Shown here piece after piece: positions 1,544 to 60,875 of a stretch of DNA of 64,000 bases (position 1 is the first letter of the stretch; every line of letters begins with the position of its first letter). Below the pieces are notes generated by a model. That model worked only from the letters and a program-made list of their open reading frames with translations. It was not told the origin of the DNA and did not search any database. Location: the NCBI GenBank assembly GCA_964057225.1, contig OZ059897.1:9982001-10046000 (forward strand), written 5' to 3'. This stretch comes from Auanema rhodensis. Lineage: Eukaryota > Animalia > Nematoda. The position numbers and the translations under genes were made by a program.

Positions 1544-2350
1544 TTCAACATCCACATGTCAACCACAATGCAGAAATGCAGTTCTGAATGTTTATCAAAA
1601 TAAATTAGGAAGAAACCTTTTAAGGTAAGCTATTCAACAAACTAAAACATCTCATGAACTTAATTTGCTAAAGATCGGACGCTTCCTGTATTCATGGACG
1701 TGAAGAACTTCGAACATGCAATTTCTTGCCTGCTGGAGAACAAGTACATTGCAGCTTAGCCAAGCTCGCTTGTGAAGCTGACCTTCAGGTATTTACTTAA
1801 TTTCTTAATTTCTTAACGACTGTTGGAAAACAAAATAGTTTGGTGTGATGATAGGCATTTGTGGTTTCTCAGCAAATTCATTTATCAATTATTTATGAAA
1901 ATTTTTTTGGAAAAACTGATAACGAATATAAATCTTTCTAGTGTAATTCTAAATGGGGAATTTTCTTCTCTGAATGTGAAGCTGAGACTGGACGAGGGGA
2001 ATGTTCACCAAAATGTGCAGGTTTCTTGAAAGAAGCTACAGCAACACCTCATGGACAAGCTTTTATCAACTGCACATGTACTGATAGGGATGATCAACTA
2101 TGCCACAATCTTAAGAACAACGTATTGAAAGTTTGCGAAAAAGTGAGTTACAGCAATCAGTTGTACCATTATCAACCAAACATTTTTTCAGCCAACAAGC
2201 CCATCTTCATCAGTTGATAACAATGCTATTGTCGAAAATTCAAATGATTCCATGGACCAATCTTCTGCTTCATCTTGGTCATTTGATATTCTTCTTCCAA
2301 CTTTGATGATGTGTATCTTACTATCCGCCAGCCTTTTCCTTTCTTTCTAA
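1544..2350 (+). CDS. phg-1: GAS1/GDNF-receptor-domain GPI-anchored protein (phg-1-like), last four exons; 5' part lies upstream
   Basis: Spliced exons give STCQPQCRNAVLNVYQNKLGRNLLRSDASC...CSLAKLACEADLQCNSKWGIFFSECEAE...CSPKC...FINCTCTDRDDQLC, the GAS1/GFRa cysteine pattern. A Ser-rich spacer and hydrophobic tail (WSFDILLPTLMMCILLSASLFLSF*) fit a GPI signal. TAA at 2348-2350. Confidence 0.8.
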
Positions 2351-3471
2351 TCTATTTTTCAATTGCCATAGTAGTTGCTGATTCCAAATCTTATTTCATA
2401 GAAAAAAAAAAGAAAAATTGATAAAACGACCTCATATGAAGAACTATAGGAATGTCGTTTAATCTGCCGCTTTTAACTATTTTACGAGTTTTTCAACTTG
2501 TCGAATCGATTAGCTTCTTCAGCATACTACATGTAAATATATATTTAAGCTTAAAAAGACCTCAAATACAATATCCGGTTATGTCGAAATTGGCTAGTCG
2601 TCGTTCACAGAAAAACTTAATTTTCATAATAAGCTTCGAAGAACTTTTTTTTCAAAAAAAAAAAAAAAACAAAAAAAAAGGCAACTCTTTTCAATTGCTC
2701 AATGCGGTTGTTGTTATATTAAATATTATTATATTTTATTGAAATAAACTGATAAATTATGGATTTGTTCTGTATTGTAGTTGATGATGAATCACACAAA
2801 ATTGATATTATATTACTTTTTTCCCATTTTTCCATATAAACTTGAAAGCAATTTTAATTTAAAAAGATGTATATGCATACGTTTATCACAAAAAATCATA
2901 CGAGAATAAGGAGCAGAAACATATAAAATGCCATAAAGCTTTATATTTCTATCATAAATATGTTGATGATAAGATTATTAATATTTATTTTACTAAACTT
3001 TTATGTATTTTCATACATCATTATAGGAAATTATTTAAAGAAAAAAGCGAAATAACTTCTTCGAATTAATTACGACTTCAAGTTAAAAAAAATCTTGATG
3101 ATAATGTATGTATGTGTAGGAATTATATCACTTTTTCCTTTTCCTTTCTTTTATCTCACTTTTTTTCTCTTTTTAATATATTTTTGGTCATAAGAAGCTT
3201 TTAGCCATTGAGCTGAAGATATGGTTCATATCAGTTTCTAAATACACCAAAGGAGATAAGAATCAACACCTTACCGAAATAATGCTTTCGTAACTCCTCC
3301 CACGCTGCAGTTACCTCTCTTTTAAAAAGAAAAAAAAACACTTTTTTATTCGATTTTTTTCATAATTTTTCTGGTTTTTGATGTAAATTCTTTCTTTTCT
3401 TTCTCATTTTTTTATCTCGAGAATTCTTTTTGAGGACAAATTTAACAAAAAAAAATTTTACCTTCAGAGAA

Positions 3472-4418
3472 ATGCTAAAATCACATAATTCTTCAAATAC
3501 TAATGATCAAAATTCAAACAAATTTCGTCGACGTTATGATGTAAGAATATTTATTTATATATATTTTTTGAAAATTATTTGGCTGATTAAGAATGATGAA
3601 CCCCGTGTGTGCGGTTGTGGTAAAACTAGTGACGTTGAAAGGTAAGTCTAGAGAAAATCTTTTCAGTTGAAACCACTTAATCATTATTAGGAATTGGAAA
3701 GGACCTATTAGGCATTATGAACACAAAGTTGCTTCTACTGAAAATCAAACTAATATCAACTCTCTAGGCAAAAAATCTATTTACTTCACTATTACTTGAT
3801 TGATTGTTCTAGAGCCATCAGAAAAAGCAAGAGAAATGGCTGAACGATATGGACCAGTATTGGATGTTAATGTAGTTCAAGATTTGAAATAGTGAGAAAT
3901 AATAATTTTTTTCGAAAAAAATTAAAAAAGATTTCAAGTGTATTCAAAGGCAGAAATGTTAAACAAGTCAATGAATATCGACGAAAAATGGTAGAGGATA
4001 TGTTTCATAAAGTAATTTTATATTTTCTTAAAATTTATTTATATTATAAATACTATTAGACTCGTAAATTGATTGAAGAAGCTGCTGATACATACACGCC
4101 TGAATTTTTTGTAGCAAAGGTATGTATTTCAGCATAATTACTGATAAACAGAATAAAAATTGAAGATGGAACAATCACATCCTGATGTACCTGACTGGAA
4201 GAAATTACTTTTAGCCAGAAAGAAATCACAACAAGTCTTATCTGAATATGAGAAAAATGCTTGGGTAAGAACTGCTACTACTGCTACTGCTGTCAATTAT
4301 ATTATTATCATTAAATTTTTCTTTTCAGGACGAATTTCTGAAATGGAAAAAGACCTATTCACCAAGCGTTAAACTCAATCCTGACTTTAATTATAAATTG
4401 GATCCAAAATTACATTGA
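3472..4418 (+). CDS. Uncharacterised small protein (about 195 aa, 8 exons)
   Basis: Phase-compatible exons give MLKSHNSS...PRVCGCGK...MEQSHPDVPDWKKLLLARKKSQQVLSEYEKNAWDEFLKWKKTYSPSVKLNPDFNYKLDPKLH*. One intron (3768-3812) probably has a GC donor. Confidence 0.7.
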
Positions 4419-5777: not shown

Positions 5778-5930
5778 TCTTCTTCTTCTTCATCTTCTTC
5801 TTCTTCTTCTCTAAATTCCTTCTTCATCATCTTCATCTTCATTATCTTCTTCTCCTTCTCCTTCTTCTTCTTCTTCTTCATCTTTATCTTATTCTTCTCC
5901 TTGTCCTCTTCATCAGCATCATCTTCATCG
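5778..5930. repeat. (CTT/CAT)n trinucleotide low-complexity tract
   Basis: Visible runs of tcttct and tcatct. Confidence 0.85.
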
Positions 5931-9488: not shown

Positions 9489-9539
<51 letters not shown>

Positions 9540-9540
9540 T

Positions 9541-9637
<97 letters not shown>

Positions 9638-26600: not shown

Positions 26601-28170
26601 ATGACTAATCCTACTCCACCTGCTTGTCTCTCAACCGAAATGGTTATTCCTCCTCGACAACTTTTTGGACCAGGTATTTTCAAAACGTTTGTTTGGCTTC
26701 TTATTCCAAAACCAATGTCAAGGTCCATCTAATATGACATCAGCTATTGCTAGTTCTCAATCCCGGAGTCTCCTTGGTCACCTCCACCCTGAATTTGTAA
26801 AGGTTAACGATACCTTTTATAATTATTTCTGTTTTCACCACCTTCATCTCTAGGTCATGTCAGATGTAAGAGTTGGACTTCAATATATGTTTCAAACTAC
26901 GAATGCTTACACCTTTGCCGTTAGTGGAACAGGTACTAGAGAAAGCATCTCTTATGTTCAATAATCTATGATGTTTAGGACATGCTGGTATGGAATGTGC
27001 TCTGCTCAACTTATTAGAACGAGGGGAAACTCTGTTAGTAGTTCAAAATGGAATTTGGGGGCAACGAGCTTCAAGCCTAGGAAAACGTATGGGTCTAAAC
27101 GTTATTGAGATTGAAGCTCCACTTGGGCAAAGTATGCCAACTGATCGTATCTGTGATGTATAAAAAGCACAAAATTCTGTTATTTAAGTATTATTTTCAA
27201 GGCAATTAAAGAGCATAAGCCGCAAGTTGTGTTCGTCTGTCATGGAGAAAGTTCGACAGGTGTGTGTCAACCTTTGACCAGCATTGGTGATATCTGTAAG
27301 CAAACGAATACACTCTTTCTTGTTGATACTGTGAGAACATTTTCTTTATTACATCACTGAATTATGAATTGAAGGTAGCTTCGTTAGGTGGAGCGAAATT
27401 CGCTATGGATGATCTTGGAGTAGATTGTGTTTACTCGGCCACTCAGAAGGTTTTGAACGCTCCTCCTGGTTTAGCACCAATATCATTTAGTGATCGAGCT
27501 ATGTACTGATTGTACAAAGTTATCTTTGTTAGTATTGTTGATCATTTTAGGAGTAAGATAAGGTCAAGGAAAGAAATAGTTCCATCATTCTACTTCGACT
27601 GCCTTGAATTAGGAAATTATTGGGGTTGTGATGATCAACTCAAAAGGCAAAATTTAACTAAAATTCATGCTCTAATTTAGCAATTTAGATATCATCATAC
27701 TGCTCCCATATCATCTGTTTATGCATTAAGAGAGGCTCTCGCAATTGTTGCGAAGGAAGGAATCAACAATGTTGTTAAACGACATGAAGAAAATGCTGTT
27801 TTTCTATATGATAAACTTAAAGAGATCGGTTTAGAATGCTTTGTCGCTAATAAGGTGTTGATTTATATTAATTCAATTAATTAGATAATTTTTTTAAAGA
27901 ACGATCGTTTGCCATGCCTAACTACGGTAAAAATTCCAGATAATGTAGATTGGAAACAGGTCATGAGCACATTATTGACAGAAGGAATTGAGGTAACTCG
28001 TATACTCAAGCTCTAATGTTCACATCGGTATATTCTAGATTGCTGGTGGGCTTGGTGCTACTGTTGGAAAAATATGGAGAATTGGAACTTTTGGCCAGAA
28101 TTCCGATCAGAAAAAAATAATAGAAGTTGTCTCCAAACTGGCTGCTGCTATTAACAAATCTAAGATATGA
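26601..28170 (+). CDS. agxt-1: Alanine-glyoxylate / serine-pyruvate aminotransferase (class V PLP enzyme)
   Basis: [55 protein letters not shown] (PLP lysine), [13 protein letters not shown] and GKIWRIG motifs; ends SKI*. Confidence 0.95.
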
Positions 28171-28652: not shown

Positions 28653-31600
28653 ATGGATGGAATGTGTTTCATCCGGTCGGGTGAAGAACCCTACATGCAA
28701 TTAGATAGATTACAACTTAGAAATTATTTTCCTCATGAAATAGAGAAATTGAGTGTTATACGTGTAACTCAAACGAAAACCTTTGACGAGGTAAAATATT
28801 TTTTTTACTAAGTTTTGATAATATATAATAACTTTAGATTGGTCATCCAGTCAAAGGAGGTTTGTACGATCCTGCTTTAGGTCCTCGAGGAAATGATAGA
28901 TGCGAAACTTGCCATCAATATGATGTTCACTGCCCTGGTTTATATTAAATTTTGTAGCTCTGTTAACAAAATATTTTCAGGTCATATCGGTCATATTAAG
29001 TTAGATGTTCCTGTTTTCAACCCAGTATTATATAGTTTCACGTTAAATGTGTGGATTTATCTTTCTTTATTTGTGCATATATGTTTCTTTTCAGTTGTTC
29101 AAAGGATCATGTGTGCAATGCCATAGACTTACGTGTAATGCTGACGGTTTAACAGCTAAAGTTTTCTTAGCACAATTGAGGTAGAAAAAATTCCAATGAA
29201 CAAAATATGTGTATTATTTAGATGTTTTGAATTGGGTGTACCTCACCTTATTCCTGTTGTTGCCTCGGCGTATAAGGACAAGCTAAGTAATATGGATGGT
29301 ATGAACCTCTTTCGTTGCACATATCCTCATTAAATTTGCAGTTTCTGACAACATGACCATTGAAGAAGAGATGCAACTGTTAGCTGAAGTTGATAAAATG
29401 ATTACTGATTATGTGGGTATACTATTGTAAATGCCAGTACTAAATATTTCTAGGTCGAAAAGCCATTGTCTGAATTGAAATGTGGTGTTCCGGATAAAAA
29501 TACTATTGACTTGAAGAAAGAAATAATGACAGAGTTTTTGAGAGGATCATTGGTATTTTTTTTAGTCTTGATTAATTAAACATATTTTTTCGTTTTAGTT
29601 CAGAAGACGAGAAAAATGTCCACTTTGTGGCGGCAAGAATGGCAAACTTACTAACGATCAAGCTAGATGTATTATTCTTAACTTTGCATCTGCTGCTAAA
29701 TCCAAAATTAAGACAACGAAAAAAGTTTGTCTATTTTTGTTGAGATTGTCTATAATTTATAGTTTTAGCCAAATATGTATAGAGATGAATTTGAAGTAGA
29801 AGAATCTGAAGAAGAATCTGATAAAGAAGGTATATTGAGAGAAAGTTTCTACTTTATTTTATCTGTATTTAGTTGATCTTGAAAAAATTGGTTACGGAGG
29901 AATTGATGTTTCTGAAGGTAGTTTAGATCAACAAATGATGGCTGTTCGAAGAGGAGCTTGTGATAAGGTTTTATACAAGATTTTATCAAAGTTAATTTTT
30001 ATTTTAAGTTGGCTTGGCGTGCTGCTGAGGTTCGTGAACACTTCCGGTTATTGTTCAAAAATGATGGAAGATTCCTTATGAAAGTATTTCCTTTTCTTTG
30101 CGAAGAGAATTCTGTAGGCTTTCTCTCATATAGCTTATCATTTTTTGTTTATTTGTAGTCTAACATTTGTCCATTGGATGGACTTTTCTCTGAATTAATT
30201 GTTGTTCCTCCTACTAAGTTCCGTCCAATTCGCTTCTTCAAAGGATCTAATTATGAAGATCCTCAAACCGTTAATCTTAGAAATTTGTTGGAAGCGGCAG
30301 AAACCATCAAAGTACGCCTATAGGTTATGATGGTTAATTACAGAATATATTATTTAAGGCTATTGTTCTTGTTATGAAAGGAGACAAATCTTCTGCTTTA
30401 CTTGAGTTGATTGCTCATAAAGTTCACGGAAAGACAATTAATGCTAAAATGCATAATGCTTATGTCTTCTTACAAAGAAAGATGAATGCTATCTTCGATG
30501 AGGTATTTATCTTTATATAAATATTTTACTACTACTACTCTATTCTTAGGATCTGGAAAAGGGCATGGACAGTACGACCATTCCTGGTATCAAACAGGTT
30601 TTGGAGAAAAAACAAGGACTTTTCCGAATGAATATGATGGGAAAACGTGTAAACTTTGCTTGCAGGTAAATAAAAAAGTATCTAATCTCTAATCATGTTA
30701 TGATTCAGATCTGTTATTACTCCTGATCCTTACTTGGACATTGACGAAATTGGTATTCCTGAGGTGTTTGCTAAAAAACTAACGTTTTCTGAACCTGTGA
30801 ATGTTTATAACCTACAATATCTACGAAAATTAGTCAAAAATGGTAGTGAAAACCACCCGGGGTACGTAAATAGTGAGAAGGGAATTATATAATTATCTTA
30901 TTTTTAGAGCTAACTTTGTATATAATTCTTCTCAAAAGAAAATTATCTTACAAGATGATTACAAAGAGCTGAGAAATGTTTCAAAGTCTTTGCAACCAGC
31001 TAATGCGGATCACATAAAAGGTCCGATGAGAGTTCTTCGTCATTTGAGAAATGGAGATATGATGATGATGAATCGTCAACCATCTCTTCACAAACCCTCT
31101 ATTATGGGTCACAGATGCCGTGTTTTGAAGGGACAACGAGCTTTGAGAATGAACTACGCTCCATGTAAAGCTTATAACGCTGATTTCGACGGAGATGAAA
31201 TGAATGGCCATCTTGTGCAATCATATATCGCTCAATCTGAAGTTGCTGACATAGGTATCTTTCGTCACATTAATTCTTCTGAGTACCCGCTTGTTTCAGC
31301 TGACGTTGGAAGTAATCTCTTGGTACCAAAGGATGCTACCCCACTTCTTGGTTTAATTCAAGATCACGTAGTTTCTGGTGTGCTTTTAACTCTTCGAGGG
31401 AGATTCCTCAACAAGGTTAAAATTATTCTTTTAACATTTTTTATTGGTTTGCTATAGGAAGATTTTATGCACCTTGTTCTTGCTTCCTTCGCTCATCATA
31501 CGGATAGGATCGAAATTCCTCCACCTTGTATGATTTTGCCACAACAACTATGGAGTGGAAAACAAGTATATATTATCCTTCTACATCTAATCTATCTATT

Positions 31601-34600
31601 ACTTTTAAGGTTATATCTTGTATCTTGAAGAATTGTATTCCTGCTGGAAAACCTTTAATCAATCTCAATGGCAAGGCGAAAACACCCTTGTCTTGCTGGA
31701 AGGTTCGCGGTTTTCCTGAGCCACAATTCGACATGAGTGAATCCCAAGTTATCTTTAGGTGAATATTTTCCAATTTATTGATAATTAATTTTCTTTCTTT
31801 CTTTTCAGAGAAGGAGAACTACTTGTAGGAGTTTTGGATAAGGCTCATTATGGTGCAACACAGTTTGGTCTTGCTCATTGTTGTTTCGAGCTCTATGGAC
31901 CTAAGATTGGCGTTAAAGTTCTTTCATGTTTCTCCAGATTGTTTACTACTTATTTACAAGTTAGATTAGTTTTGTTATCTTTGTTTAAGCAAAGATATTT
32001 CAGTTCCATGGTTTCACCTTAGGAGTAGCTGATATTTTAATTAGACCAGAAGCTGATGAGGACAGAACTAAACAAGTTTTAGAAAGCAGAACTATCGGAG
32101 ATCAAGTAATTGACTGTTTATAGAGTTCATTTTAACGTTTCTATATAGGTTACTATCAAAACATTCAATCTCAAAGAAAATGCTTCACAAGATGAGATTA
32201 AACATGCTCTTGCTTCCGCATATAACAATCCAGCTGGTCAAGGAACTGATGTGAAAATGCTTGATTATGGAATGAAACAAGGCGTTGCTAAATATAACGA
32301 TGCTATCATCAAGTATGTTATTGTTTATGCATCAAGTTGTTCATGGTCGTATTGTTTAGATCTTGTGTTCCTTCTGGTCTCATTCGTTCATTCCCAGAAA
32401 ATGCTCTCCAACTTATGATCCAATCAGGAGCTAAGGGATCTTCTGTTAATGCTATACAGGTACTTATTAGCCACCTATTTTTGAAAATCTTTTCTGTTTT
32501 CCGATTTCTTGCTGTCTTGGTCAAATCGAGTTGGAAGGTAAGCGTATGGCTGTAACCATTGCTGGACGTACTCTACCTTCTTTCAAGTATGTTTAGAAAC
32601 CAAATACGGTTTCGAGTTTTTTTTTTTAGATCTTTCGATTCTTCACCGAGAGCCGGAGGTTATATTGATCAACGTTTCTTAACTGGTATAAATCCTCAGG
32701 AATTATTCTTTCACACAATGGCAGGAAGAGAAGTTAGAATGTTTAATAATTCCTTCTTTAACGTGATCTTAAGGGTCTTATTGATACTGCTGTTAAAACA
32801 TCCAGATCTGGATATCTTCAAAGATGTATTATCAAGCATCTTGAAGGCATCAAAGTTCATTATGATTCTACTGTCAGAGATCATGATGGTTCTATTATTC
32901 AGGTGATTCATTTTAAAAGTGTGTTGTTTATTACTAAAATTTCAGTTCCGTTATGGAGAAGATGGACTTGATACCTGTAAATCGTCCTTTTTGTCTACCA
33001 AAACTTTCAAATTTTTGGAAGATAATCTGGATGCTGCTATGAGTTGTAAGCCCGGCAATGTCAGAGATAGGGAGTATGGTGTAGTCGAAGCTGAGAAACA
33101 GTATTACAAAATACAAAAGTGGAGAAGAAAAAGAGAGAAAAAAGGAATAACGGGAAAAACTTATCAATCCGGATTCACTGAATTCTCATACGAACATCTA
33201 GGTAAAAACAAATTTATAATTCTTTATTGTTTTCTTTTTTTAGGAATGGACAAGAGCTCTATTATTGCTCTATGGTTGGAACTTTCGCCTGAAGAGAAAA
33301 AAGAATATGAAAAGAGAGCCCCTAGCAGGTGTCCAACTGCTGTAGATGAGGTGAGACTTAAACCATTTTGTTTAAGTTTGTTTTTTTAAGAAATTCAATC
33401 TTATGCGTACTCTTGGTGCTTTGCCCGAGAAAACTCTTGATATTATCAATGACTACGTTGGTGATAATGATAATATGAAACATGTATTATTCTGGAAAGG
33501 TAGATACGTTAAACTGAAGCATTGTACTCATTCAAATTAAATTAGGTATGCAATCTATTGCTAGCCCCGGAGAAAATGTTGGATTACTTGCTGCTCAATC
33601 TATTGGAGAGCCTTCAACTCAGATGACACTCAATACTTTCCATTTCGCCGGTAGAGGAGAAATGAACGTTACGCTTGGTATTCCACGTTTAAGAGAAATT
33701 CTTATGACTGCTTCCAAAAATATTGCGACACCTAGTGCACAAGTATGTTGCTACTTACTCATTTGTTGAATTACAATAATTATCTCCAGATTGCTGTAAT
33801 CCCTGGTACATCTCGCGAGAAAATTGACAGAATCAAGCAAGATTTGGATAGAGTTTATCTTAAAGACGTTCTTCGTAACTTTACCCTCGAAGATAGAATA
33901 AATCTAAGCAATGGGTAAGTCACCCTTCCTGTTACACTTTAAAAATATTGGCTTTGCAGTGAACGTTGGAGAAGATACATCCTTCGTCTGGAAATTTTAC
34001 CTGCTCAAAAAAGAGAAAAAGGAGCTCAGCATTTGAAACGACGAAGAATTATGCGAGAAGTTGGAATACTTTAAATATTTTTCATAACTCTGATCCTTTA
34101 GATGGAAAAACGCTTCTTTAAATTGATTGCTAAAACCATAGAGAATAAATTGAAGACTATAGCAAACTATCAGCAAGTACAAACTAAGAAAATGCGTCAA
34201 GGAAATCTAATTGCTGGAATAGGAAATGATGTTCCAGATGCTCGTCAAAGGTATCTGTGAAAAAAATGTTTCGATCAGTAATAAACCATTCATAGAAGAC
34301 GTATTGATGACGGAGCTTCTTCCGACGAGGAAGCTGATGGTGGTAATGATGCCGATGCTGGTGAGAAGAGGCTTCATAATCGACACAAGTTAGTTTCATA
34401 TCTATTTCTTTACATGTTTTTGTGATGTTCAGTGACGAAGCTGCCGATTATGAAGGAGAAGAAGAAGATAGAGGTGCTGTCGAAGAGGAAGTACCAGAAA
34501 TTCCAGAAGATGAAGAGAACGATGACGAATATGATCAAGAATCTGAAGGAGAAGATACACCAGAATCTGGACCAGTAGATGAAACTTCCAATCCTGATTT

Positions 34601-36221
34601 ACGTATTCGTGTAAGTCATTCAATTATTTGTTCAGCTTAATGATATATCATTGTAGCAAGTTCTTCAATCTGCTGGATACGTCGTAGAGTATGAATTTGA
34701 TGTTCAAAAAGATAGATGGTGTCAAGTTGTTTTCCAAACACCCTTGAGCAGTAAGACCAAGCTAGACATGTCAGCGATTATTGATAAGTTAGTGAAACAT
34801 TTGTTGAACATACTAATCCTTTCATGTTTATAGGGAAATTGAGAACTTTATTGTTCATCAAACTCCAGGTATTGAGAGGTGCGTAGAAAGTGTACAAAAC
34901 AAAAACGGTGTTGATGTGACGTACATTCAAACACAAGGTGTCAATCTTCAGGTAAGTACAACTTTGTTATCAATTATTCAGAACAATTTTATTTTTAGGC
35001 TCTTTTCCGGTATTCAAATTGGCTGGATGTTAATAGTGTTTACTCTAACGATTTGAATTTGGTGTTGAACCAGTATGGTGTTGAGGCTTGTGCTAAAGCC
35101 ATCGTCACTGTGAGTTTATGTCTTCCATTCGCGAGTATTCTCCACCAAATGAATGTTTCAAAAACGATAATTCATGTTTTCCTCCACAATGCTTTGTTTT
35201 CGTAGTATAGCCATTGAAAACTTAGGAGATACGGTACTTTCTGTTTAAGTCTTCTGTGTTTTTCCGTATGCTACTGTAAACTCTCTAAGTTCTTTTTCTT
35301 CTGTTTCTAGTTGTTTTTCCTACTATTTCGTAACCATGTTACTGCTGCTTACAACAGAGAGCCATACGAAGCGGGGGTTGTCTATTGGTCTTTCTACGTC
35401 ATGAAACCCTGTTCCCAATTCATCAGCAATCAGCTATATCATTATTAATAATCTGATAGACATTTTTCCAAGATCAAAATGTTTAGTGATATTCGTTTAA
35501 ATTTTGGACGCTCCGATCAAAAACTTTTCTAATTTCTTTGAACCCAAACGTTTTACCGTGGAAAAATGCGTTGCAAAAAATTGATTAAAACTAGTGGAAT
35601 GAAACTTATATTTCTATATTTTAGGAAATGAATAATGTGTTCGGAGTGTATGGTATTGAGGTATCAAAGAGACATTTGTCATTGACCGCCGATTACATGA
35701 CGTTCACTGGACGTATAGCACCATTCAATCGCGGTGCCATGTCCTCCAGTGCTTCTCCGCTACAGAAGATGACATTCGAAACAACGGTTGCGTTCTTACG
35801 TGAATCTCTATTACATGGTACGTGAAAAAGTATTTGAACTCAAAAGAAAAGTTACACTGTAATTGACATTCTTATGACTCCGATATATACATGGTTGATC
35901 AATTAAATTAGTGATTTGTCACAAATGAATCTATTAATATAGATTCATGAACAAGAAATAGAATTATAAAAAATGTGATCAGGGAACATTAGTTATTTTC
36001 GTTATACTATTTTTAGCCAAACACAAAGACATGGAAGATATTTATTAAACTTTGTTTATCATGGCGTCATATCTAGGATTGTAAATGTTCTAAATGATAT
36101 ATTAATTTCAGGAGAAGAAGACTATTTGTCATCACCTTCAGCTCGTTTAGTTGTTGGTAGCTTGAGTCAAGGAGGTACAGGATCATTCGATATCCTTTTT
36201 GATATGGATTACTCTTCGTAG
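28653..36221 (+). CDS. rpoa-1: DNA-directed RNA polymerase I largest subunit (RPA1/RPA190), about 35 exons
   Basis: [10 protein letters not shown], CxxC...HCPGHIGHI zinc site, [37 protein letters not shown], catalytic [63 protein letters not shown] and an acidic expander-like loop. No CTD heptads. Confidence 0.97.
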
Positions 36222-46370: not shown

Positions 46371-46373
<3 letters not shown>

Positions 46374-51100: not shown

Positions 51101-54100
51101 TCTGATAAACCTATACGTCAAGGCATTAAGTACACAGGATTTCTTATTGTCAGAGTTGACAAAGAGAAAGAAGATATTGATGTGAATCCTTCTATGTTGA
51201 AGAAAAAAAGTAGCATTAGATACTTGAGGAATGTTTCTCAAAACAGGTATTAAAGTTTTATTTTTTCTCGTTTTCAATGTTCGTGTTCCAGAGATTCTCC
51301 TCATTATTCCTCTTCTGTCAGATCAATACGACAACTACATATGAGCGGCCCGGTTTACGGATACAGTGCATATTTCAAACCTGTTTTTCTACAAGATGAT
51401 GGTACCTGTGCTTTTACTTTTTTATTTCAAAATTTTACCTTTAGACGGAAGTTCGTTGGGAACAGTGTTTAAAGTTGTCGGACCTGTTCTGCTATTTGTT
51501 ATAATGGCATCCGTTGTGGGTTTGGTTTTCATGCAAAGGTTCGCATACTTCATAATTTTTAACTATTACATTTTTTGTTTATAGAAGAGGGATGCTAGGC
51601 AACTGGTGGCCTCTCAAAATAACAAAAGAAACTCCGGAAAGAACTTTGCTAAAGCCTACTTATCAGGTAAAATATTGCGTTAGCCTGTGATTCATAATTC
51701 ATTTTTCTCTATAGGCTGTTTTGATTGAAGATTTACCATCAGAATATCTTCTTAGACATCGTGATTCTGATTTTATGTTTAGTCAAGAATTTGAAGTAAT
51801 TTCTAAATTTCTTGTTATTTATAATTTATATTTTTATTTCAGTCATTACCATCGTATGCATATGAAGCACATTCTAGTAACCGAAAAGAAAATGCTCCCA
51901 AGAACAGGTTTTTTAAGGTTTCGTAACAAGTTTTAATCATTTGAATTTCAGATATAATGATATTAGAGCATTTGATTGTACCCGTGTCAAACTTAAGAAA
52001 ATAAATGGATTGGAATGTTCAGATTATATAAATGCTAACTATGTTAATGGCTGGGATCCTCGTAAGAAATTCATTGCTGCGCAAGCTCCATTAGAAAATA
52101 CTCTTGATGATTTTTGGCGGATGATTTGGGAACAAGTAGCCATTCCTCTCTCTTAACATATAATATTTTTTTGTTCAGGAAAGCAGAATTGTGGTAATGG
52201 TAGCTAACTTATTAGAAAAAAATAGGAACCAGTGTTGTAAATATTGGCCAGATGATGTTCCAATTAGGTAATTTATTTGAATTTAGAATTCAAAAATTCT
52301 TTTTTAATTAACAGATATGGCGATTATAAAGTAGTACCAGTAGCATCTAATTACAATGCTTGCTATACCGTTCGTAGTTTTGATCTAATTAATATGAAGA
52401 GTTCAAGAAATTCATTTTCAAAGAGGTACAGCTTTTTTATTTATGTTTTAAAATTGTCAAGACATTTAGATCGGAATTTGGATCTGCTGAATCGAACATA
52501 GGATCCGAATATGCTAATGTACCATCAGCTAGATTGAGTGGAAGAGTAGAAACACCTTTAAATGATTGTGAAGAAGGTATTTAACTATTTCGACATTTGA
52601 AATTAAATAATATATTATATTTAGTACGTAGAATAGTTCAATATCATTTTACTACTTGGAATGACTATAGAGCCCCTGAATGTTCAACTGGACTTTTAAG
52701 GTAATTGTGACTAGAAACATCTTCAATTTACGTCTTATTTTAAGATTTGTCCATCGTCTCCGAAGTCTGCCAGAATTTAATGAATATCCTGTTGTTATTC
52801 ATTGCAGGTATACTATTTCATCTTTATCAATATAATTATTATTTATATTTAGTGCTGGCGTTGGAAGAACTGGAACTTTTGTTGCTATTGACAGTATGTT
52901 AGATCAGATAGAAGCTGAAGGAAAAGCCAACATCTTTGGGTTTGTCTCGGATTTGCGAAAGCAGCGAAACCTGATGGTCCAATCATTGGTATTATACTCT
53001 CTTGTTAAAAATTTATATCTAACTTTGTGCTTTTCAGGAGCAATATGTTTTCATTTATAAAGCTCTAGCAGAATGGTATTTATATGGTAATACTGATGTC
53101 GAAGCTGAAGATCTAGAAGACTACTATAACAAGCTCTTAGATTCTTCTGATAGGTTTGTTCTGACACTCATGCCTGTATATTATTTCAATTTATTTTAGA
53201 TCTTTCCGAAATGTTATGTCATCTGGATTAGCTGCCCGTCCTGATTCTAATGCTCCTAAGAATGGGCTTGAAGCGCAATATAAGGTTGGTTCATTTTGTA
53301 TGGAAAATAAAAATAGTTGACAACTTTTAGAAATTGACTCAAAGCCTTGAGTCAACACCTAAAATTTCGTTTGCATTGAAAGAAGAAAATATAATGAAAA
53401 ATCGTTTTGAAGCTGCTGTTCCCTATGATAAGTAAGTTCACAGTCAAAATATTGCCTTGTACACTTTTTTTTTAGAAATCGAGTAGTTCTTGCTCCTCTT
53501 ATGGGATCTGTTGACGATTCTTCTTATATTAATGCCAGTGAATTGAAGGTATAATAACATTTGAAATTAATTTTATATGGTTTTTCTAGTTACAGGGTTA
53601 CTTCTATCCCTATATTTTGGCTCAAGATCCAGTTAGTGAAAACACCGTGTTCGATTTTTGGAGAATGATCAGCGAAAAGAATGTGACAACATTAGTCATG
53701 TTATCTCGTGAGGACGATCTAAGTCTTTCAGAAAAAGTATTTATATCTTATTATATATTTACTTAATTGATGTGATTTCAGTACTGGCCTGAAGACAGCG
53801 AAAAAGAGTTTGTAACATCTAGAAACCAGAATAGGTTTACCATCCAATTGCTTAGTGAAGAACGATTTTCATACTATCACACCAGAAAACTTCTGTATCA
53901 GTCGTCTGTATGTTATTTATCTTTTATTTTATTTTATAAATTCACCATTTAGTTCGGAGGCAAAGAATGGATTGCTGTAACTCAATATTGCTTACTTGAT
54001 TGGCCACCTGAGCAAAACGTTCCGTTTTCGTCTAGCTCGGTTCTTTCTCTGATTGGACGTGTTTTGGAAACTCAGAGTCAGCTTCCGGATTCCGGTCCTA

Positions 54101-54418
54101 TTGTAGTTCATTGCCGGTATGTGTAATTTACTCTTGATAGCAATGTAATTCAAATTATTCCAGAAATGGGTCTTCACAGGGAGGAATCTTCTGTTCTGTC
54201 TCCTTACTACTAGAACGTTTAAAAACAGAACAGAAAGTAGATGTTTTCCAAACTGTAAAGATGCTTCAATCTCAAAGAACTATGATGTTTATGAAATTGG
54301 TAAGTAAAGTCTCTTAACATCTTCAACTCAACAACCTTTTTTCCAGGATGAATATGATTTTTGTTATCGAGCAGTTATAGAATATATTCGGCATATGACG
54401 AAATTTCACCGGCTCTGA
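48158..54418 (+). CDS. clr-1: Receptor protein tyrosine phosphatase CLR-1 (Cys-rich, Ig, FN3, TM, two PTP domains), about 36 exons
   Basis: Signal peptide, Cys-rich N-terminal region, Ig ([16 protein letters not shown]), FN3 repeats ([26 protein letters not shown]) and TM ([20 protein letters not shown]). D1 has KNRYNDI, DYINAN, WNDY and [10 protein letters not shown]; D2 has degenerate [13 protein letters not shown] at 54416-54418. Confidence 0.9.
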
Positions 54419-55297
54419 ATTAATTGTTTCCACTCTCACTCATTTGATGATCTCTTGCGCCTTACTTCGAAAGACGTTCTGTTTTCAGTCTTTTTGATTA
54501 ACGGGTATCGTTATTCTCATTTTATTTTTGAACTCTTGTATGACATTTAGAGTTACTATTATAATGACTCCCCGAATAAGTTAAGGGAATAACCTTTTCC
54601 TCAATATTGCTAGTCAGATAATATCACTTTATTTATTGCAATTGATGTAATTTTCATTCACTCCTCCTCAATGTGCCTAATTTCTAACTTTTTTGAATTC
54701 AAATAATGCTTGTTCTTCTTTATACTTAACATTATTTTCTTATCTTTAGGTTTAACTGATTCACATTAAGCAATTCTACAATTTCTGATTTTCTCAATCA
54801 TTAATGGCCCTAAATTAAAGCCTCACACGAGTATTTGTGTATATATATTGAACAGTTTACTGGAAAAGTTCTATTTTGTTAATTTAATTCAACGTTTCTT
54901 TCAATAATAATTATTCATTCTACAAATCTTTAAGAGTATTTTAAATTTAGGTTGTAGACGATATACTCTCCCAGATATTCGTGTGGAATACATGGGGCTT
55001 CAAAAATAATTATGTGCCATATAGATGATATAGATTTACTTGTTATGTATGAGTAATAAAAATATAACTATTGATATAGTGATATTATATTTGAAAATTT
55101 CGTTCCCTCCCTACGTTTAGTCGACAATATTCGAATTTCATGATCTGTTTGTAAAGAAACAGATTTAGCAATACCATAGAAACTAAGCTAATTGTACATT
55201 TTGGAAATCAGAATAAGAAATGTTTAGATATCAATTATTTATCATAATATATTTGCACATTTGTTGAGATCATACAATATACTGATGAAAACAATTG

Positions 55298-57594
55298 TTA
55301 AGATAATCCCAATTTTTCGGACATCTGGGTATTTAAGGTTGTTGAACTATCACTTACAACATCGTTCATATACTCTATGCCATTAAGTCCCATTCGATTC
55401 ATTATATGTCCCATAGAGGGGAATCCTATTGAAGTTCCACTGTTTACATTAACTCCAATCAAAGGAACAGCCATTCCCTTCAAAATTTTAGTTTTTACGT
55501 CATAAAATTAGTTCAATAATACCTTATTGAATGATATTCCTCCATTATACCAATCTACTCCTACTCGATCTGCTAAGCCAATGAATGGTCCTACATGATA
55601 TCCGTTTGTTACTTGAATTGGCTTTCCTAGTTCTCCTTCTTTCAATGGAACGTGGACCTAAGATTCAAATGAGAGTTCTTTCTTCTATTGAGGACCACTT
55701 ACTTGAGTTCCTGCTCCTCCTTCAACTCCTAAACTTTGACCGATCGGCACACTCCAGCCAGTTTTATATCCATATGTTCCTTCGTACCAATTGGCACCAT
55801 ATTCACCGGTTTGAGACCAGAAATCTCGAACTCCAAGGTTGTTAGAGTATCCACCACCCCATGACCCGAAGTCAATTTTTCCGTGATGGCCATTGCCTAC
55901 ACCTCCTTCTTCATTCACAGGATAATAAGGAATTCCATTAACTCCCCAATCATAGTATGTTAATCCAACTCCAGAAGAGAAAGCATTTGCAACTGCTCCG
56001 AGTGGCTTAGCCTGAATATGGTATGAGGTGATGTTTAATCACGATGAATCGTTAAACCTGAGCTTGAAATTCACCACAGTCTTCGTTGTAACCTTGGCAT
56101 TTAGCTACAAGGGCTTCCGGAATTTTCGGACCATAACATACCGGAAATGGGGAAAATATATTTTGCTTTAATTTTTACTTTTCTAGTACCTGAGCAGCAA
56201 CTTTTGAGAATTTCAAGCATAAATCATAAATTTCTTTTTTAGAAAGCCCTAATTGTTTAATTGGAACTCTTCCAGTGAACTATAAATTATTTAAATTATG
56301 AGCTCTACTTAAGTATATGACATACTGTTTGTACTTTCTGTTTAATTGGTGTTTTTGATTCAGAATTAGTAAATGGTGAATCAGGTTCGCTCTCTTCTTT
56401 TGTTTCTTCTTCAATAAATCCTTCTTGATCTGAGCTTTGCTTCTTATTTTCATCTAGAAGATCACCATCCTCTACCTAAGTAGAATAAACAACTCAAAAC
56501 AAACAGTAAAAACAGAAAAATTACAGTTTTTGCTGCAAGCATTCGAGGTTGTGGTCGATTTTGGCCGCCGCCATTTTTACCATTAGCCATGTTAAGCAAT
56601 TCTTGAACCTAATTCATCAATATTGATTGAACATTTGAACAAGCGGGAACAAACCTCCTTGAAAGGTGTTGCTGGCTTAAAAGCGCTTTCACTTATTGGT
56701 TCATAATTTTGATTATTATTATTTTCTTTTATATAAAAGTAATCTCCAATTCTCTCATCTACATCTGTATTTTCACGATCTCCATCTTGATCAGATTTTA
56801 GTTTTGGTAATTCAAGGAATGGTAAAACTTAAAAACAATAAGAAATGATGTAATAATCTCAAAATAATTCCTACTTTTTTTTGAAAAATCTAATAATCCT
56901 GTTCCCTGTTCTCGAACATCAGAGACTTTTATTGTTCCTAAACCTGCTATTGAAGCCTGATAAGAACATTTTTCAAGTTCGCGACTTTAAGAAATTAATT
57001 GCATTACCTTAGCGCTTGATCCAGATTGTTCTCCAGTGGCTGTTTCTCTAGTCATATAACCCATATTAGGAGTATCAGACAGACTATATGTACCTCCATT
57101 GAAAGGCTCATTTTCTGATCCTTCTGAAAAAAAAAACATTGAAAATTGTATTCAAAAGTGATTTAACCTGGAATAAACTTGGCAACAATTTGCTCAGAAT
57201 CACCAGCTCCAAGCAATCCCAAACCGTTGATTGGTAGTTTGGTGTCATCTCCTATTTTGTGTCCAAAAGCAAGAGGACCTGAATAAAGATTCAGAAATGA
57301 TAAAGAAATTTCAGCCAGAGGCAAGAAATATAAAAATCAAAAAAATTCATAAACGTACCAATAGCTCTTAGAAAATTTGATGGACTTCTACGAACTTCCG
57401 AATAATATCCTAATGGCCTAGCAACAGGTGCATCTCTTTTAATTCTTAGAAAGCTTTGAAATAAGTTAGATTGATCATACATATACACTTCATTAGCTAT
57501 AAAATTAAAATATTAAATAAGAATATGATTAGATTTTACCAAATGCGTAGGTAACTAGAAGTAGGAGGCAAAAATTCCATATGGCTGTCCGCAT
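55298..57594 (-). CDS. Uncharacterised secreted protein: furin site, acidic linker, 4-Cys module, Gly/Trp-rich repeats
   Basis: MRTAIWNFCLLLLVTYAFA signal peptide, RIKR, LCLKFSKVAAQVCYGPKIPEALVAKCQGYNEDC, then YDWGVNG, ANWYEG and VDWYNG repeats; about 12 exons. One intron needs a CG acceptor (56142). Confidence 0.8.
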
Positions 57595-57861
57595 GATAAC
57601 GACAGCTAATGCTTAATGTTAGAAATTTCAAAGCTAATCTCGCATGTGATAAGAACTTCGTAAATTAAAACCGGATCGAGAACGAGATTTGACACTATCC
57701 TATTGTGATGAAGAAAACGCCGTGAATCGTTTATCATGTTACCTATCCGCCTGGTTTTATCTCAGCTTGAGAGCATGATAAAGACAATTTTAAAGATTAA
57801 AATAAATTCTTTATAAATTACAAAGATAACCGAAAAAAAAAGAAAAAAAAAAGAATGCTGA

Positions 57862-59502
57862 TCAAGAAAAAAATGATGGAAAAAAACTTTTGAGACCTCT
57901 GTGTGGAAACTGATCATGGCGTTCCCTTAAAAGTTTCTTGTATTCATTATTTTGAATTTCCTAAAAGAAAATATTAAATTTAATTTATTAACATCATTCT
58001 TCACTTTTAAAACTCTCCATCCATTTGATTGAGTTTTCAAAATATAATCAGAGTTATCTGTTCGCGTTGATAATCTATTAGTTCTAAAATAAATATTTAT
58101 AATTAAGTCAGAAGTTATATTAAGTTTAACCTTAAACCATAGATTAATGAACATGCTAGTCTAGCACTAATACAAGTGTATAAAAGATGCTCTTCCTTAT
58201 ATTCTTTTGATCTCTTCTCTTTATAACCGTTCAGAAAGTGTGAAGTAATATGCTCAAAACTGAAAAGAAACCTTCCATATCCATATAGTTTTTCAGAAAT
58301 TTAATAACTTTCCCCCACCTAATATTAGGATATGACAAATGCATGTAAAGAATACAAGCTCCTATATCACAGTTTCTTGCGGACACATGAACATCGCCAA
58401 AATCAAGAAGTCCAGATATCTAAAGATAAATAATTATATATATATATATATATATTATATGTTATAGTCTAATCTCAAACAAGTAATAATAATTGGAATT
58501 TTTATATTATCACGTAAAGTTCACGTTTGAGTAGTTCAGAAAGGTTTTGTTTAAAAGGCGTGAAACCCGGTTGTATACTATATAGAACTAACCTTCAACT
58601 CATAACTATGAGCGCTTGAAACCAAAATGTTAGTTTCATTGAAATCAGAATGAATAAGACCTTAATAATGGAATCAAATAGGTTGTTTAAAATAATTCTT
58701 ACCAATATCTAATTTATTCTTTTCAAAAAAAACTTTATTTTCATAATTTTTGATGGCATTTTGTGCCAAACTGCCTTTATCCTCAGGTAAATTTCCATTT
58801 TTCATTAGAATATCTATCTCACTATAAAAACATTTAAAGTTATCCGGAGATATGAAAGGTAAATGTGTTGTTTTCCAATCATTTTCATCACATATGTTAT
58901 GAAAGTCGGCCATTAATTTTCCAAGATCGGATAGGAAATCGTCATTTATTTCATGATCTTCAAGTACAGATCCTGGCAATGTTTCAAACATGCGAATAGG
59001 AAATTGCTCTGAAATTACAAGAGATGTTGGTTAAAATCGTTTTCCGTCTCAATAAGTAAACTTGAATTGATCGTAACTGATCCAGTCAGTGTTCCATGTA
59101 TCGTTGGAATTAATACAGGTGCCGGTATACCATTTGCATTCAGAACACGATACATTTCGTTTTGAAGATCTAAACATTACTTTCTGTGAATAAAATACCA
59201 ACTTTGTCTTGCAAGCCTAAATGTTCTTGATTTCGTGCTTCAATGGGATTTGATATTTTGATCACAACATCGTGAATATCACTCGCTTTGTGTTTGAACA
59301 CAACATTTTTGATTCGAAAATTAATATCTTCATATCCGGAAAGATGAACGAAATCGCCTTAAAATATTTATAAAAGTCATGTAAACAATTGGAACAAACC
59401 TTCATCAATATGATAAGTGTTCTTAGCTATTGCCAGTTTTTCCTCATCGCTCAAAAATGGAACTTGAGTTTCTTCATTTACGTCAATAAAAGGATCAGAC
59501 AT
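57862..59502 (-). CDS. HYKK: Hydroxylysine kinase / APH-family phosphotransferase (HYKK-like)
   Basis: LSGYEDINFRI, VIKISN, IRMFETLPG, LGKLMADFH, GLIHSDFNETNILV (Brenner-type motif), GLLDFGD, ARLACSLIYG and YILKTQSNGWRVL. The 3' end is approximate. Confidence 0.85.
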
Positions 59503-59843
59503 ATCTCAAAAAGAGAGAGATAGAGTTAATAAGAGAAAGAGAGAGAGAGAAATCCAAAAAAAGCTTTCTAATGGATAATCAATACATAATTTTTGAAACA
59601 TGAATAATAATTCTAAAATGATAAAACTGATAAAATTTATTATGTTTTTTATATCAATCAATTGATTATTTTCTCTTAATCAATAAACATTATTATATGA
59701 GCTCTTCCGCATTTGTTGCCACCTCACCCCTCCCCTCCCCCCCTTATATGTACTACTTACTACGAGTATTGTAATCTTCTTTAATAATTCTGAATGATTT
59801 ATTTCTTTGAGAAATTCGGAATAATCATTATTTTTCATTTTTT

Positions 59844-60875
59844 TCATGGAAAATCATCCATGTTATAGCTAAAAACTTCGCTTTCTTCTGCTTCATCGAA
59901 TAAAAATGCTTCACTTTTGCAACTTAAATCTGATGATAATCTGAAAAGTCAATGTTAAGTTGTATTGTGATCTTCTGAACTAGCCGAGATAGTTGTGATG
60001 ATGGCCTACTGTTTGGTGCTGATATTGGTGCAGATAGATGTTGACGTTGATTATTCGTCGTTGCAGGAATTGAATAGTTATGATGTGTCACAACAATTTC
60101 TGGCAAATATCCTTGAAACGATTTTGCTCGTGATGGAGGTTTGATAACCAACGGAAAACGTAAATTCGTGGGTACGCTTCCAGTGGAGTTGCGTTCTTTG
60201 ACTGAATGATTTTCTTAAAAACATTGCGTGCAAGTTAAATTACCTCCATGACAACTTGAACTCCGTCCCCTCAACTTCCGGATTCCTCGTAAACCTAAGT
60301 GAGTCAGCCAAGCTTGAGCCTTGCCCTTATCTTCTCTGAATTTGATCAAGTTAAAAATGATTTTTCTAATAGATTAAGTAAAGCTAACTTCAACTTTCTA
60401 CGTTGTCTCTCTCGCTCTTCATAGTCAACATGAATTTGCATTGAAGCCAACAACATTGCAACCAGAAAATAAAGTAAAAATTAAAAAAATATTTTTATGG
60501 AAGAAAACTATTTGTAGTTCAGTGTTCTTGTAATAGATACCTGATCATCAACATTTTCACTTTTACGTACAGAACGGAACAACAAGCAAACAATAACAGA
60601 AGCAAATACACCAAGTATAGCAATTATATAAATATCTGCTCCTCTTCTATGTTCCTTTAAATTTAAAATAAATAATATTTGCTGATATATATATCGAATA
60701 CCCTAGAGTTTTTATAATCATTCCATGCTTGATTATTAATTTGAGCTACAACATGAAGTAATTTCCGATAACATTCAGATGATAGCTCAGGCTGTACAAA
60801 ATTATGATTTTTGAAAGAAAAATGATTATTTGCAGATGATAATGAAGGAATTTCAGTGAGATTCATTCCTATCAT
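59844..60875 (-). CDS. Single-pass KCNE/MiRP-like K+ channel accessory subunit (nematode MPS family)
   Basis: N-terminal sequon (NLT), ECYRKLLHVV, one TM IYIIAILGVFASVIVCLLF followed by RSVRKSE as in KCNE proteins, charged coiled segment, Ser/Pro-rich tail. Needs a TG acceptor (60463) and probably a GC donor (59984). Confidence 0.65.

What the first reader, a model, noticed from the sequence alone, without database searches (positions are those of the whole stretch)
1544..60875. Window-wide pattern: relaxed splice-site code (TTTC-N-G acceptors, weak GC donors, frequent AAG acceptors)
Seen: in roughly 160 hand-placed introns there are 3 non-AG acceptors, up to 4 GC donors, more than a dozen AAG acceptors (e.g. 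ending 26722, 27374, 32773, 33390) and very variable donor +3 to +6 bases (GTTTTA, GTAGAA, GTGGAT, GTACGC). Intron length is tightly 42-55 nt and I found no frameshift or nonsense lesions in the exons. Known: nematode U2AF reads an extended UUUUCAG/R motif and C. elegans can still splice at mutated AGs, but natural non-AG sites are normally very rare. Inference: this lineage may define short introns largely by length plus a TTTC-N-G motif, implying altered U2AF35, PRP8 or second-step fidelity. Three random errors at the same consensus position seem unlikely.
Basis: inference. Interest (0 to 1): 0.85.

Follow-up and report, generated by a model that had tools for sequence, protein, structure and literature searches.

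The report
Worm introns that end without AG
In this roundworm, a relative of Auanema, about 2% of the very short introns in this stretch are cut out exactly although they end in CG or TG instead of the near-universal AG. This makes it a natural test case for how the splicing machinery finds an intron's end.

Summary
My own motif-agnostic gene finder found 162 short introns in this window (median 46 nt, 95% are 40-55 nt). 17.6% of acceptors are AAG.

- **56142-56189 (GT-CG):** spliced RNA contigs from three runs skip it exactly. No GT-AG reading fits the junction.
- **60463-60540 (GT-TG):** contig-length and depth arithmetic fit its removal.
- **59170-59216 and 59941-59984 (GC donors):** both are RNA-confirmed.
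- **DNA check:** contigs from another study carry the same bases, so these are not assembly errors.
- **32460-32503 (GT-CG, RNA polymerase I):** supported by conservation only. The single AG alternative would delete nine residues kept in all eight orthologs compared.

All three non-AG sites have TTTC at -6..-3, G at -1 and a purine at +1. A model without position -2 still ranks them first. But 98% of introns still end in AG. The closest relative found, Auanema sp. JU1783, shares the weak donors and AAG richness yet has AG at the same polymerase intron. C. elegans already tolerates mutated AGs. Altered splicing factors remain untested.

The scan noted this pattern before on other pieces of this genome. 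I found no paper describing it.

The parts
32460..32503 (+). 44-nt GT..CG intron (acceptor TTTTCCG, next exon starts with A) in the RNA polymerase I largest-subunit gene
   Evidence: Found independently by my gene finder. The junction Q|ISC is gap-free in 8 orthologs. The only AG alternative (32460-32530, 71 nt, GAG acceptor) deletes 9 residues that every ortholog keeps. The same intron position ends in TGTTTAG in Auanema sp. JU1783 and in TTTCAG in Pristionchus fissidentatus. No reads were laid here.
56142..56189 (-). 48-nt GT..CG intron (acceptor ATTTCCG, next exon starts with G) in a Gly/Trp-rich, probably secreted, protein gene
   Evidence: the joint 56138>56187 skips 48 nt in the spliced contigs of runs X10, X11 and X12. 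It can slide by 4 letters; of the five possible placements only GT..CG has a GT donor and none ends in AG. DNA contig X9 record 12 (55682-57501) has 0 differences.
60463..60540 (-).
   Evidence: X10 record 3 holds 279 nt for genomic 60202-60700 (499 nt). The 220 nt skipped equal 42+53+78+47, the four predicted introns. Bin depths fit a contig that skips it (11.2 expected against 11 seen; 11.5 against 11.7). The joint itself was among the 11 not displayed. DNA contig X9 record 17 (59774-60837) has 0 differences.
59170..59216 (-). 47-nt GC..AG intron with a weak donor (TAG|GCTTGC)
   Evidence: joint 59169>59217, ends CT..GC on the + strand, in 3 RNA runs.
59941..59984 (-). 44-nt GC..AG intron with a weak donor (TCG|GCTAGT)
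   Evidence: X11 record 6 joins 59940 directly to 59985. X10 record 3 and X12 record 10 also start a piece at 59985.
27647..27688 (+). 42-nt GC..AG intron (AAG|GCAAAA) in the alanine-glyoxylate aminotransferase-like gene
   Evidence: The junction K|RYHHT aligns without a gap to the JU1783 ortholog, whose intron at the same position starts with GT. There is no GT donor nearby.
3768..3812 (+). 45-nt candidate GC..AG intron (TAG|GCAAAA) in a small gene of unknown function
   Evidence: Gene-finder prediction only. Not verified.
28653..36221 (+). RNA polymerase I largest-subunit gene with about 40 short introns; host of the first CG acceptor
   Evidence: 73% identical to Auanema sp. JU1783 P0164. 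38 of 42 intron positions are shared. My model of the 3' end beyond about 35260 is unreliable.
55298..57600 (-). Gly/Trp-rich protein gene with 11 short introns; host of the second CG acceptor
   Evidence: RNA contigs of about 1.8 kb in 3 runs (records 1, 4, 8). No Pfam match for its large exons. The 5' limit is approximate.
57674..59502 (-). Neighbouring gene with 8 introns, including one GC donor and two AAG acceptors
   Evidence: Separate RNA contigs (records 2, 5, 9). My gene finder wrongly fused it to the previous gene through a false 391-nt intron (57497-57887).
59844..60882 (-). Small membrane protein gene; host of the TG acceptor and one GC donor
   Evidence: RNA contig X10 record 3, 817 nt. 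Gene model. The part that my model put upstream of 60882 is a CT microsatellite artefact.
55478..55522 (-). Example of an RNA-confirmed AAG acceptor (TTTGAAG). Others are 56828-56874, 58661-58702 and 59358-59399.
   Evidence: joints. 4 of the 16 RNA-confirmed introns end in AAG.

Best explanation
These are ordinary major-spliceosome (U2-type) introns of an Auanema-clade rhabditid nematode. Its introns are held to about 45 nt.

The 3' splice site is picked mainly by three signals: a U-rich tract next to the junction (U at -5 in 91%, TTTY at -6..-3), the G at -1, and the narrow distance from the donor. The A at -2 adds little further information. Where the tract is optimal (TTTC) and the first exon base is a purine, a pyrimidine at -2 (CG or TG) is tolerated and the intron is still removed exactly.

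The likely reader of these signals is the U2AF heterodimer, which in C. elegans binds UUUUCAG/R.

Such sites arise by mutation of normal AG sites. The orthologous polymerase intron in the closest relative found ends in AG. They persist as nearly neutral variants at about 2% in this window. GC donors with poor flanks (2.5%) and AAG acceptors (17.6%) belong to the same low-information signal set, which the relative shares.

Shown: the sites exist in DNA, splicing is exact, and non-AG ends associate with TTTC.
For: - RNA contigs of 3 runs skip 56142-56189 exactly, with no AG placement possible. Contig length and depth arithmetic fit removal of 60463-60540. DNA contigs of another study match with 0 differences.
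- The polymerase junction is gap-free in 8 orthologs.
- All 3 non-AG sites have TTTC at -6..-3 against 17.6% of AG sites (p=0.0065), G at -1 and a purine at +1.
- No AG lies within 27-46 nt downstream, nor in the last 24-45 nt of these introns, so nothing competes with the non-AG end.
- Without position -2, the length-plus-matrix model still ranks the true acceptor first in 147 of 162 introns and in 3 of 3 non-AG introns. Without position -1 the figure falls to 123 of 162.
- -5 U is the most conserved tract base, as in C. elegans (PMC4889670).
- The JU1783 ortholog has AG at the same intron and a similar AAG share, 8 of 40. Its aminotransferase intron has a GT donor where this genome has GC.
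- In C. elegans a TTTC tract suffices for splicing after the AG is mutated (PMC4484395, citing Zhang and Blumenthal 1996 and Aroian 1993).
Against: - Only three events in one window, and the window was flagged because it has them. The 1.9% rate may overstate the genome average.
- The runs laid are assembled contigs, so splicing efficiency and minor isoforms are invisible.
- The polymerase intron has no RNA evidence here.
- U2AF binding was not tested, and the splicing factors of this genome were not seen.
- The weight matrices were trained on the same introns they score.
Confidence: 0.62

Rival explanations
1. The splicing machinery itself has changed in this lineage. U2AF35/UAF-2, PRP-8 or second-step factors such as PRP-18, SLU-7 or PRP-22 would have lost stringency for the A at -2. 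YG ends would then be generally competent and hundreds of constitutive non-AG introns would have accumulated.
For: - The window rate (3 of 162) is far above the handful of natural non-AG sites reported for C. elegans, which are all alternative germline sites (PMC4484395).
- All three have a pyrimidine at -2 and none is GG or AA, which suggests a specific rule.
- Many first-stage notes report further GT-CG and GT-TG introns elsewhere in this genome. These are leads only.
Against: - 98% of introns keep AG, and the exceptions occur only in the best TTTC context. A still counts.
- The relative with the same weak splice signals has AG at the orthologous site and no internal non-AG intron among about 50 introns inspected.
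- No splicing-factor sequence was examined.
- C. elegans tolerance shows that unchanged machinery may suffice.
Confidence: 0.22
2. The non-AG and GC sites are mildly harmful lesions fixed by drift. They would be spliced inefficiently, with part of the transcripts retained or mis-spliced and degraded. The assembled contigs would show only the surviving correct form.
For: - The contigs cannot show retention or rare isoforms.
- The polymerase CG state is derived relative to JU1783 and Pristionchus.
- The restriction to optimal contexts fits selection against weaker versions.
Against: - The contig depths of the genes that carry them are similar to those of their neighbours, though contig depth is a poor measure.
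- One host is an essential single-copy gene, RNA polymerase I.
- The same bases occur in DNA from a second study.
Confidence: 0.12
3. Artefact: assembly errors at the -2 base, or misplaced introns in hand-made or automatic gene models.
For:
- A canonical in-frame 71-nt alternative exists there.
Against: - Two of the three sites are matched with 0 differences by DNA contigs of another study and are skipped exactly in RNA contigs.
- The canonical alternative at the polymerase site removes 9 residues that every ortholog keeps, and uses a GAG acceptor. GAG occurs in 0 of 159 AG acceptors in this window.
Confidence: 0.03
4. The non-AG introns are U12-type (minor spliceosome) introns, which tolerate varied terminal dinucleotides.
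For: The donor of the 78-nt intron, GTATCTAT, matches 6 of 8 letters of the U12 donor consensus GTATCCTT.
Against: - The other two donors (GTACTT, GTACTA) do not match.
- None has a TCCTTRAY branch site 10-15 nt from the 3' end.
- All three end in the nematode U2-type TTTC tract.
Confidence: 0.01

Closest known systems
C. elegans UUUUCAG/R 3' splice site read by U2AF, and AG-independent splicing of mutated sites (Aroian 1993; Zhang and Blumenthal 1996; Hollins 2005, as cited in PMC4484395 and PMC4889670)
   Same: Short introns, a U-tract abutting the junction, -5 U as the most conserved tract base, a purine at +1, and splicing at the former site after loss of the AG when TTTC is intact.
   Different: In C. 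elegans the non-AG sites were induced mutations or reporter constructs. Here they are natural, apparently constitutive, present in independent DNA data and at percent level in this window. The consensus is also looser here: -3 is T 44%, C 38%, A 18%, where C. elegans has a strong C.
Natural non-AG proximal 3' splice sites used in the C. elegans germline (par-4 TG, ubxn-6 AT, icd-2 GG; Ragle et al. 2015, PMC4484395)
   Same: Natural use of a non-AG acceptor in a rhabditid nematode, including TG.
   Different: Those are alternative sites a few nucleotides upstream of a strong canonical AG site, and they lack a U2AF65 tract. Here no AG lies within 27-46 nt, the site itself carries the optimal TTTC tract, and the only form in the RNA contigs uses it.
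TG dinucleotides as alternative 3' splice sites in human U2-type introns (PMC2374985)
   Same: A U2-type intron ending in TG; G at -1 is kept.
   Different: The human cases are alternative sites beside an AG site in 36 genes. Here TG and CG are the sole acceptors of very short introns.
Nematodes with raised GC-AG content, such as Globodera rostochiensis (PMC4901422, as cited in PMC5906903)
   Same: GC donors above the usual level of under 1%. This window has 4 of 162, two of them RNA-confirmed.
   Different: The sample is small (p=0.017 against 0.6%). The donors here have poor flanks (GCTTGC, GCTAGT), whereas GC-AG donors in other species have better-conserved flanks than GT donors. Non-AG acceptors were not reported for Globodera in the text I saw.
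U12-type introns
   Same: Tolerance of unusual terminal dinucleotides.
   Different: The donor and branch-site consensus are absent, the acceptor is the U2-type TTTC tract, and the clade is not known to have a minor spliceosome.

Membership tests
Nematode U2-type short intron with a UUUUCAG/R acceptor | GT (rarely GC) at the 5' end | tested here: met
   All three non-AG introns start with GT. Across the window, 158 of 162 start with GT and 4 with GC.
Nematode U2-type short intron with a UUUUCAG/R acceptor | U-rich tract at -7..-4, with U at -5 most conserved, and C or U at -3 | tested here: met
   The acceptors are TTTTCCG, ATTTCCG and TTTTCTG. -5 is T in 91% of all acceptors.
Nematode U2-type short intron with a UUUUCAG/R acceptor | AG as the last two intron bases | tested here: not met
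   The ends are CG, CG and TG. The RNA joint at 56142-56189 allows no AG placement.
Nematode U2-type short intron with a UUUUCAG/R acceptor | Recognition by the U2AF65/U2AF35 heterodimer | not testable with these tools
   This needs binding or depletion experiments. The factor genes are not in the window.
U12-type intron | Donor consensus RTATCCTT | tested here: not met
   GTACTTAT and GTACTAGA do not match. GTATCTAT matches 6 of 8.
U12-type intron | Branch site TCCTTRAY 10-15 nt upstream of the 3' end | tested here: not met
   No such motif occurs in any of the three intron sequences.
U12-type intron | Minor-spliceosome snRNAs present in the genome | not testable with these tools
   Only this window is available, and Rfam finds nothing in it. 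[quoted passage not shown]
Germline alternative non-AG proximal sites (Ragle type) | A strong canonical AG site 18 nt or less downstream, used alternatively | tested here: not met
   The next AG lies 27, 28 and 46 nt downstream. The RNA contigs show one form only.
GC-AG introns | GC donor with AG acceptor, removed exactly | tested here: met
   59170-59216 and 59941-59984 are confirmed by RNA contigs. 27647-27688 is supported by the ortholog alignment. 3768-3812 is unverified.
GC-AG introns | Compensating strong donor flanks (consensus AG|GCAAGT) | tested here: not met
   The donors are TAG|GCAAAA, AAG|GCAAAA, TAG|GCTTGC and TCG|GCTAGT.

The most novel reading that the evidence does not exclude
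This Auanema-clade lineage has evolved a spliceosome in which the A at -2 is no longer checked at either U2AF35 binding or the second catalytic step. UUUC-Y-G would then be a regular, efficient acceptor class used constitutively in hundreds of genes, including essential ones. That would make it the first animal with a percent-level class of non-AG major-spliceosome introns.
Probability: 0.22. Interest if true: 0.8.

Novelty: new variant of a known kind. Interest (0 to 1): 0.6.

Why it matters
The AG at the intron's 3' end is one of the most invariant signals in eukaryotic genes. It is read twice, by U2AF35 and in the second catalytic step.

Natural, constitutive CG and TG acceptors in conserved genes show how far a length-constrained, U2AF-tract-driven system can do without the A. 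They give a set of in vivo substrates for testing 3' splice-site proofreading.

There is also a practical cost. Annotation pipelines that allow only GT/GC-AG will break or mis-model these genes. My canonical-only run deleted 9 conserved residues from RNA polymerase I, dropped an expressed exon, and split a third gene in two.

Tried and rejected
- **Assembly error or misplacement.** Rejected for two sites by RNA and independent DNA contigs.
- **U12-type introns.** Rejected on donor and branch motifs.
- **Ragle-type tandem alternative sites.** Rejected because no AG is nearby.
- **False non-canonical calls by my gene finder.** I discarded CT-AG 893-941 (upstream of the real gene), GA-AG 20082-20128, GT-AC 15042-15083 and GT-GG 51881-51981 (all antisense to stronger genes). 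I also discarded GT-CG 63869-63956 and GC-AG 63496-63542 (GA microsatellite or weak ORFs). A GT-TG call at the end of the JU1783 polymerase gene was read-through past the true stop.
- **Gene finder on the Pristionchus locus.** The output was unusable because base composition and intron lengths differ.
- **Own-species polymerase protein or transcript fragment spanning the CG junction.** None was found in the protein database at 177-3006 aa.
- **Pfam on the exons of the two less conserved host genes.** Nothing found.
- **Rfam and tRNA scans of the window.** Empty.
- **Literature searches** for natural GT-CG or GT-TG introns in nematodes, and for Auanema splice sites. Nothing relevant. Aroian 1993 and Hollins 2005 are not held, so I cite them through papers that cite them.
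- **Orthologs of the two less conserved host genes in JU1783.** Not fetched: spliced proteins have no reference and I did not paste long sequences.
Full report
**What the window is**

It is AT-rich DNA (about 32% GC) packed with genes that have very short introns. There are no tRNA or Rfam hits.

The RNA polymerase I largest subunit encoded at 28653-36221 is 73% identical to that of Auanema sp. JU1783. It is 61-64% identical to strongylid and Caenorhabditis orthologs. The JU1783 contig has the same aminotransferase-polymerase gene order. The source is therefore an Auanema-clade rhabditid nematode. I did not determine the species.

**Independent check of the observation**

I wrote a Viterbi gene finder with these parts: codon log-odds, donor and acceptor weight matrices, and an intron-length prior. 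Any terminal dinucleotide is allowed at a penalty. I trained it on the window itself.

- 32460-32503, GT..CG
- 56142-56189, GT..CG
- 60463-60540, GT..TG

Earlier first-stage notes on this window name the same three.

After removing artefacts, the census is 162 introns of 100 nt or less:
- 155 GT-AG, 4 GC-AG and 3 non-AG.
- Median length 46 nt; 95% lie within 40-55 nt.
- Acceptor -3 is T 70, C 61, A 28 and G 0 among the 159 AG acceptors.
- Donors are weak. +3 is A in 67% and +5 is G in 45% (on the 169 short introns before cleaning).

The relative entropy is about 6.1 bits for the donor and 6.8 bits for the acceptor.

**Read evidence**

Runs X10-X12 are recorded only as guessed RNA. Their contigs skip at least 15 predicted introns exactly, so they are spliced transcripts. 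All 15 joints displayed coincide with my predicted introns.

- **56142-56189 (GT-CG).** The joint 56138>56187 skips 48 nt in all three runs and can slide by 4 letters. The five possible placements read GG..CC, GT..CG, TA..GG, AC..GT and CT..TA on the coding strand. Only one has a GT donor and none ends in AG. This also refutes the canonical alternative, which is to skip the 28-codon exon with a 178-nt intron.
- **60463-60540 (GT-TG).** Its joint was among the 11 not displayed, but the data constrain it tightly.
  - X10 record 3 (817 nt) has 279 nt for genomic 60202-60700. The 220 nt missing equal the four predicted introns, 42+53+78+47.
  - The two bin depths match a contig that skips 60463-60540 (11.2 expected, 11 seen; 11.5 expected, 11.7 seen). 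They do not match one that retains it (14.9 and 15.6 expected).
- **GC donors.** 59170-59216 is shown directly (ends CT..GC on the + strand). 59941-59984 follows from adjacent pieces of X11 record 6.
- **DNA.** Contigs of run X9, from a different study, cover all of these sites with zero differences. Only one difference was found across the whole stretch (60924).

**The polymerase intron**

The junction Q|ISC is gap-free in eight orthologs, from nematodes to molluscs.

A canonical in-frame alternative exists: 32460-32530, 71 nt. It needs a GAG acceptor without a U-tract, and -3 G occurs in 0 of 159 AG acceptors here. It lies outside the length range that holds 95% of introns. It would delete ISCCLGQIE, which every ortholog retains. 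I rate use of the CG site at about 0.85-0.9.

**Comparison with relatives**

- At the same polymerase intron position, JU1783 has a 38-nt intron ending TGTTTAG.
- Pristionchus fissidentatus has one ending TTTCAG there, and C. angaria has no intron there. The CG state is therefore derived.
- 38 of 42 polymerase intron positions are shared with JU1783. Its acceptors are C 20, T 12 and A 8 at -3, and its donors are equally variable. Frequent AAG acceptors and weak donors are thus features of the clade, not of this genome alone.
- In C. angaria, 0 of 22 predicted polymerase introns end in AAG (small sample, my model).
- The aminotransferase GC-donor intron (27647-27688) has a GT donor in JU1783, and the junction K|RYHHT is conserved.
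- I saw no credible internal non-AG intron among about 50 JU1783 introns. At a 1.9% rate this is uninformative, since P(0) is about 0.35.

**What the three sites share**

- TTTC at -6..-3 in 3 of 3, against 28 of 159 AG acceptors (Fisher p=0.0065).
- G at -1, a pyrimidine at -2, and a purine at +1.
- No AG within 27-46 nt downstream, and none in the last 24-45 nt of the intron.
- Two of the three start with GTAC, against 8 of 159 AG introns (p=0.01). This is a post hoc observation and I give it little weight.

Given the donor, a length-plus-matrix model ranks the true acceptor first in 159 of 162 introns. Without position -2 the figure is 147 of 162, and all three non-AG sites are among them. 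Without position -1 it is 123 of 162. The matrices were trained on the same introns, so these figures are optimistic. The ranking of positions is still informative: the A at -2 is the most redundant signal.

**Mechanism**

In C. elegans, U2AF binds the UUUUCAG/R octamer, -5 U is the most conserved tract base, and a TTTC tract suffices for splicing after the AG is mutated (PMC4889670; PMC4484395, citing Zhang and Blumenthal 1996 and Aroian 1993).

From general knowledge of spliceosome structures: in the second step, the G at -1 pairs with the donor G at +1, and the A at -2 contacts the branch adenosine.

The simplest reading has three parts:
- In about 45-nt introns the tract, the G at -1 and the short distance fix the site.
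- Loss of the A is tolerated where the tract is optimal.
- Such variants drift to fixation.

This needs no change in the machinery. The alternative, a lineage-specific loss of stringency, is not excluded. It is favoured by the apparent frequency of such sites.

**How common it is**

Three of 162 is far above the C. elegans baseline. There only three natural non-AG sites were reported, all alternative germline sites next to a strong AG (PMC4484395). GC-AG is 0.6% in C. elegans and under 1% in most nematodes (PMC5906903).

The window was flagged because it has these sites, so its rate is an upper-biased estimate.

The scan holds many further first-stage notes of GT-CG and GT-TG introns on other pieces of this genome. 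One follow-up reports two such introns cut out exactly. These are leads consistent with a genome-wide pattern, not independent evidence. I found no paper describing natural GT-CG or GT-TG introns in nematodes or in Auanema.

**Verdict**

This is a new natural variant of a known nematode property.

Noticed in passing
window 32460-32530: A canonical-only gene model replaces the 44-nt CG intron by a 71-nt GT..AG intron and silently deletes 9 conserved residues from RNA polymerase I. Public annotations of this genome may carry such errors. No own-species polymerase protein was found in the protein database at 177-3006 aa.
   Followed up: partly
window 32460, 56189 (donor ends): Two of the three non-AG introns begin with GTAC, against 8 of 159 AG introns (Fisher p=0.01). 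This is post hoc. It could be chance, or a link between donor +4 and the acceptor.
   Followed up: partly
L003 8333-8378 (Auanema sp. JU1783 aminotransferase gene): The predicted orthologous intron ends in TTTTGAG, with G at -3. That never occurs among the 159 AG acceptors of the window. It rests on my gene finder only.
   Followed up: no
window 60998-61110 and 63690-63830: Long CT/GA microsatellites. The first lies just upstream of the small membrane protein gene. Both create fake open reading frames and fake introns in a simple gene finder.
   Followed up: partly
window 16017-18089 and 18876-21301, - strand: Two neighbouring genes with Lustrin cysteine-rich repeats (Pfam PF14625), probably tandem paralogs.
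   Followed up: no
window 48178-54755, + strand: A large gene of about 1350 codons and about 40 introns, with protein-tyrosine phosphatase domains (PF00102) and a cysteine-rich N-terminal part. All of its introns are GT-AG in my model.
   Followed up: no
window 57497-57887: The gap between two same-strand (- strand) genes. RNA contigs end or start near 57600-57674, so these are two transcripts, not one. Run X9 has loose ends at 57138-57517 and 58105-58207, which may reflect structural or repeat differences in that sample.
   Followed up: no
window 34910-34998: My model split this 89-nt stretch into two abutting introns with a zero-length exon. It is probably one 89-nt intron, or holds a tiny exon. 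It aligns to one 43-nt intron in JU1783.
   Followed up: no
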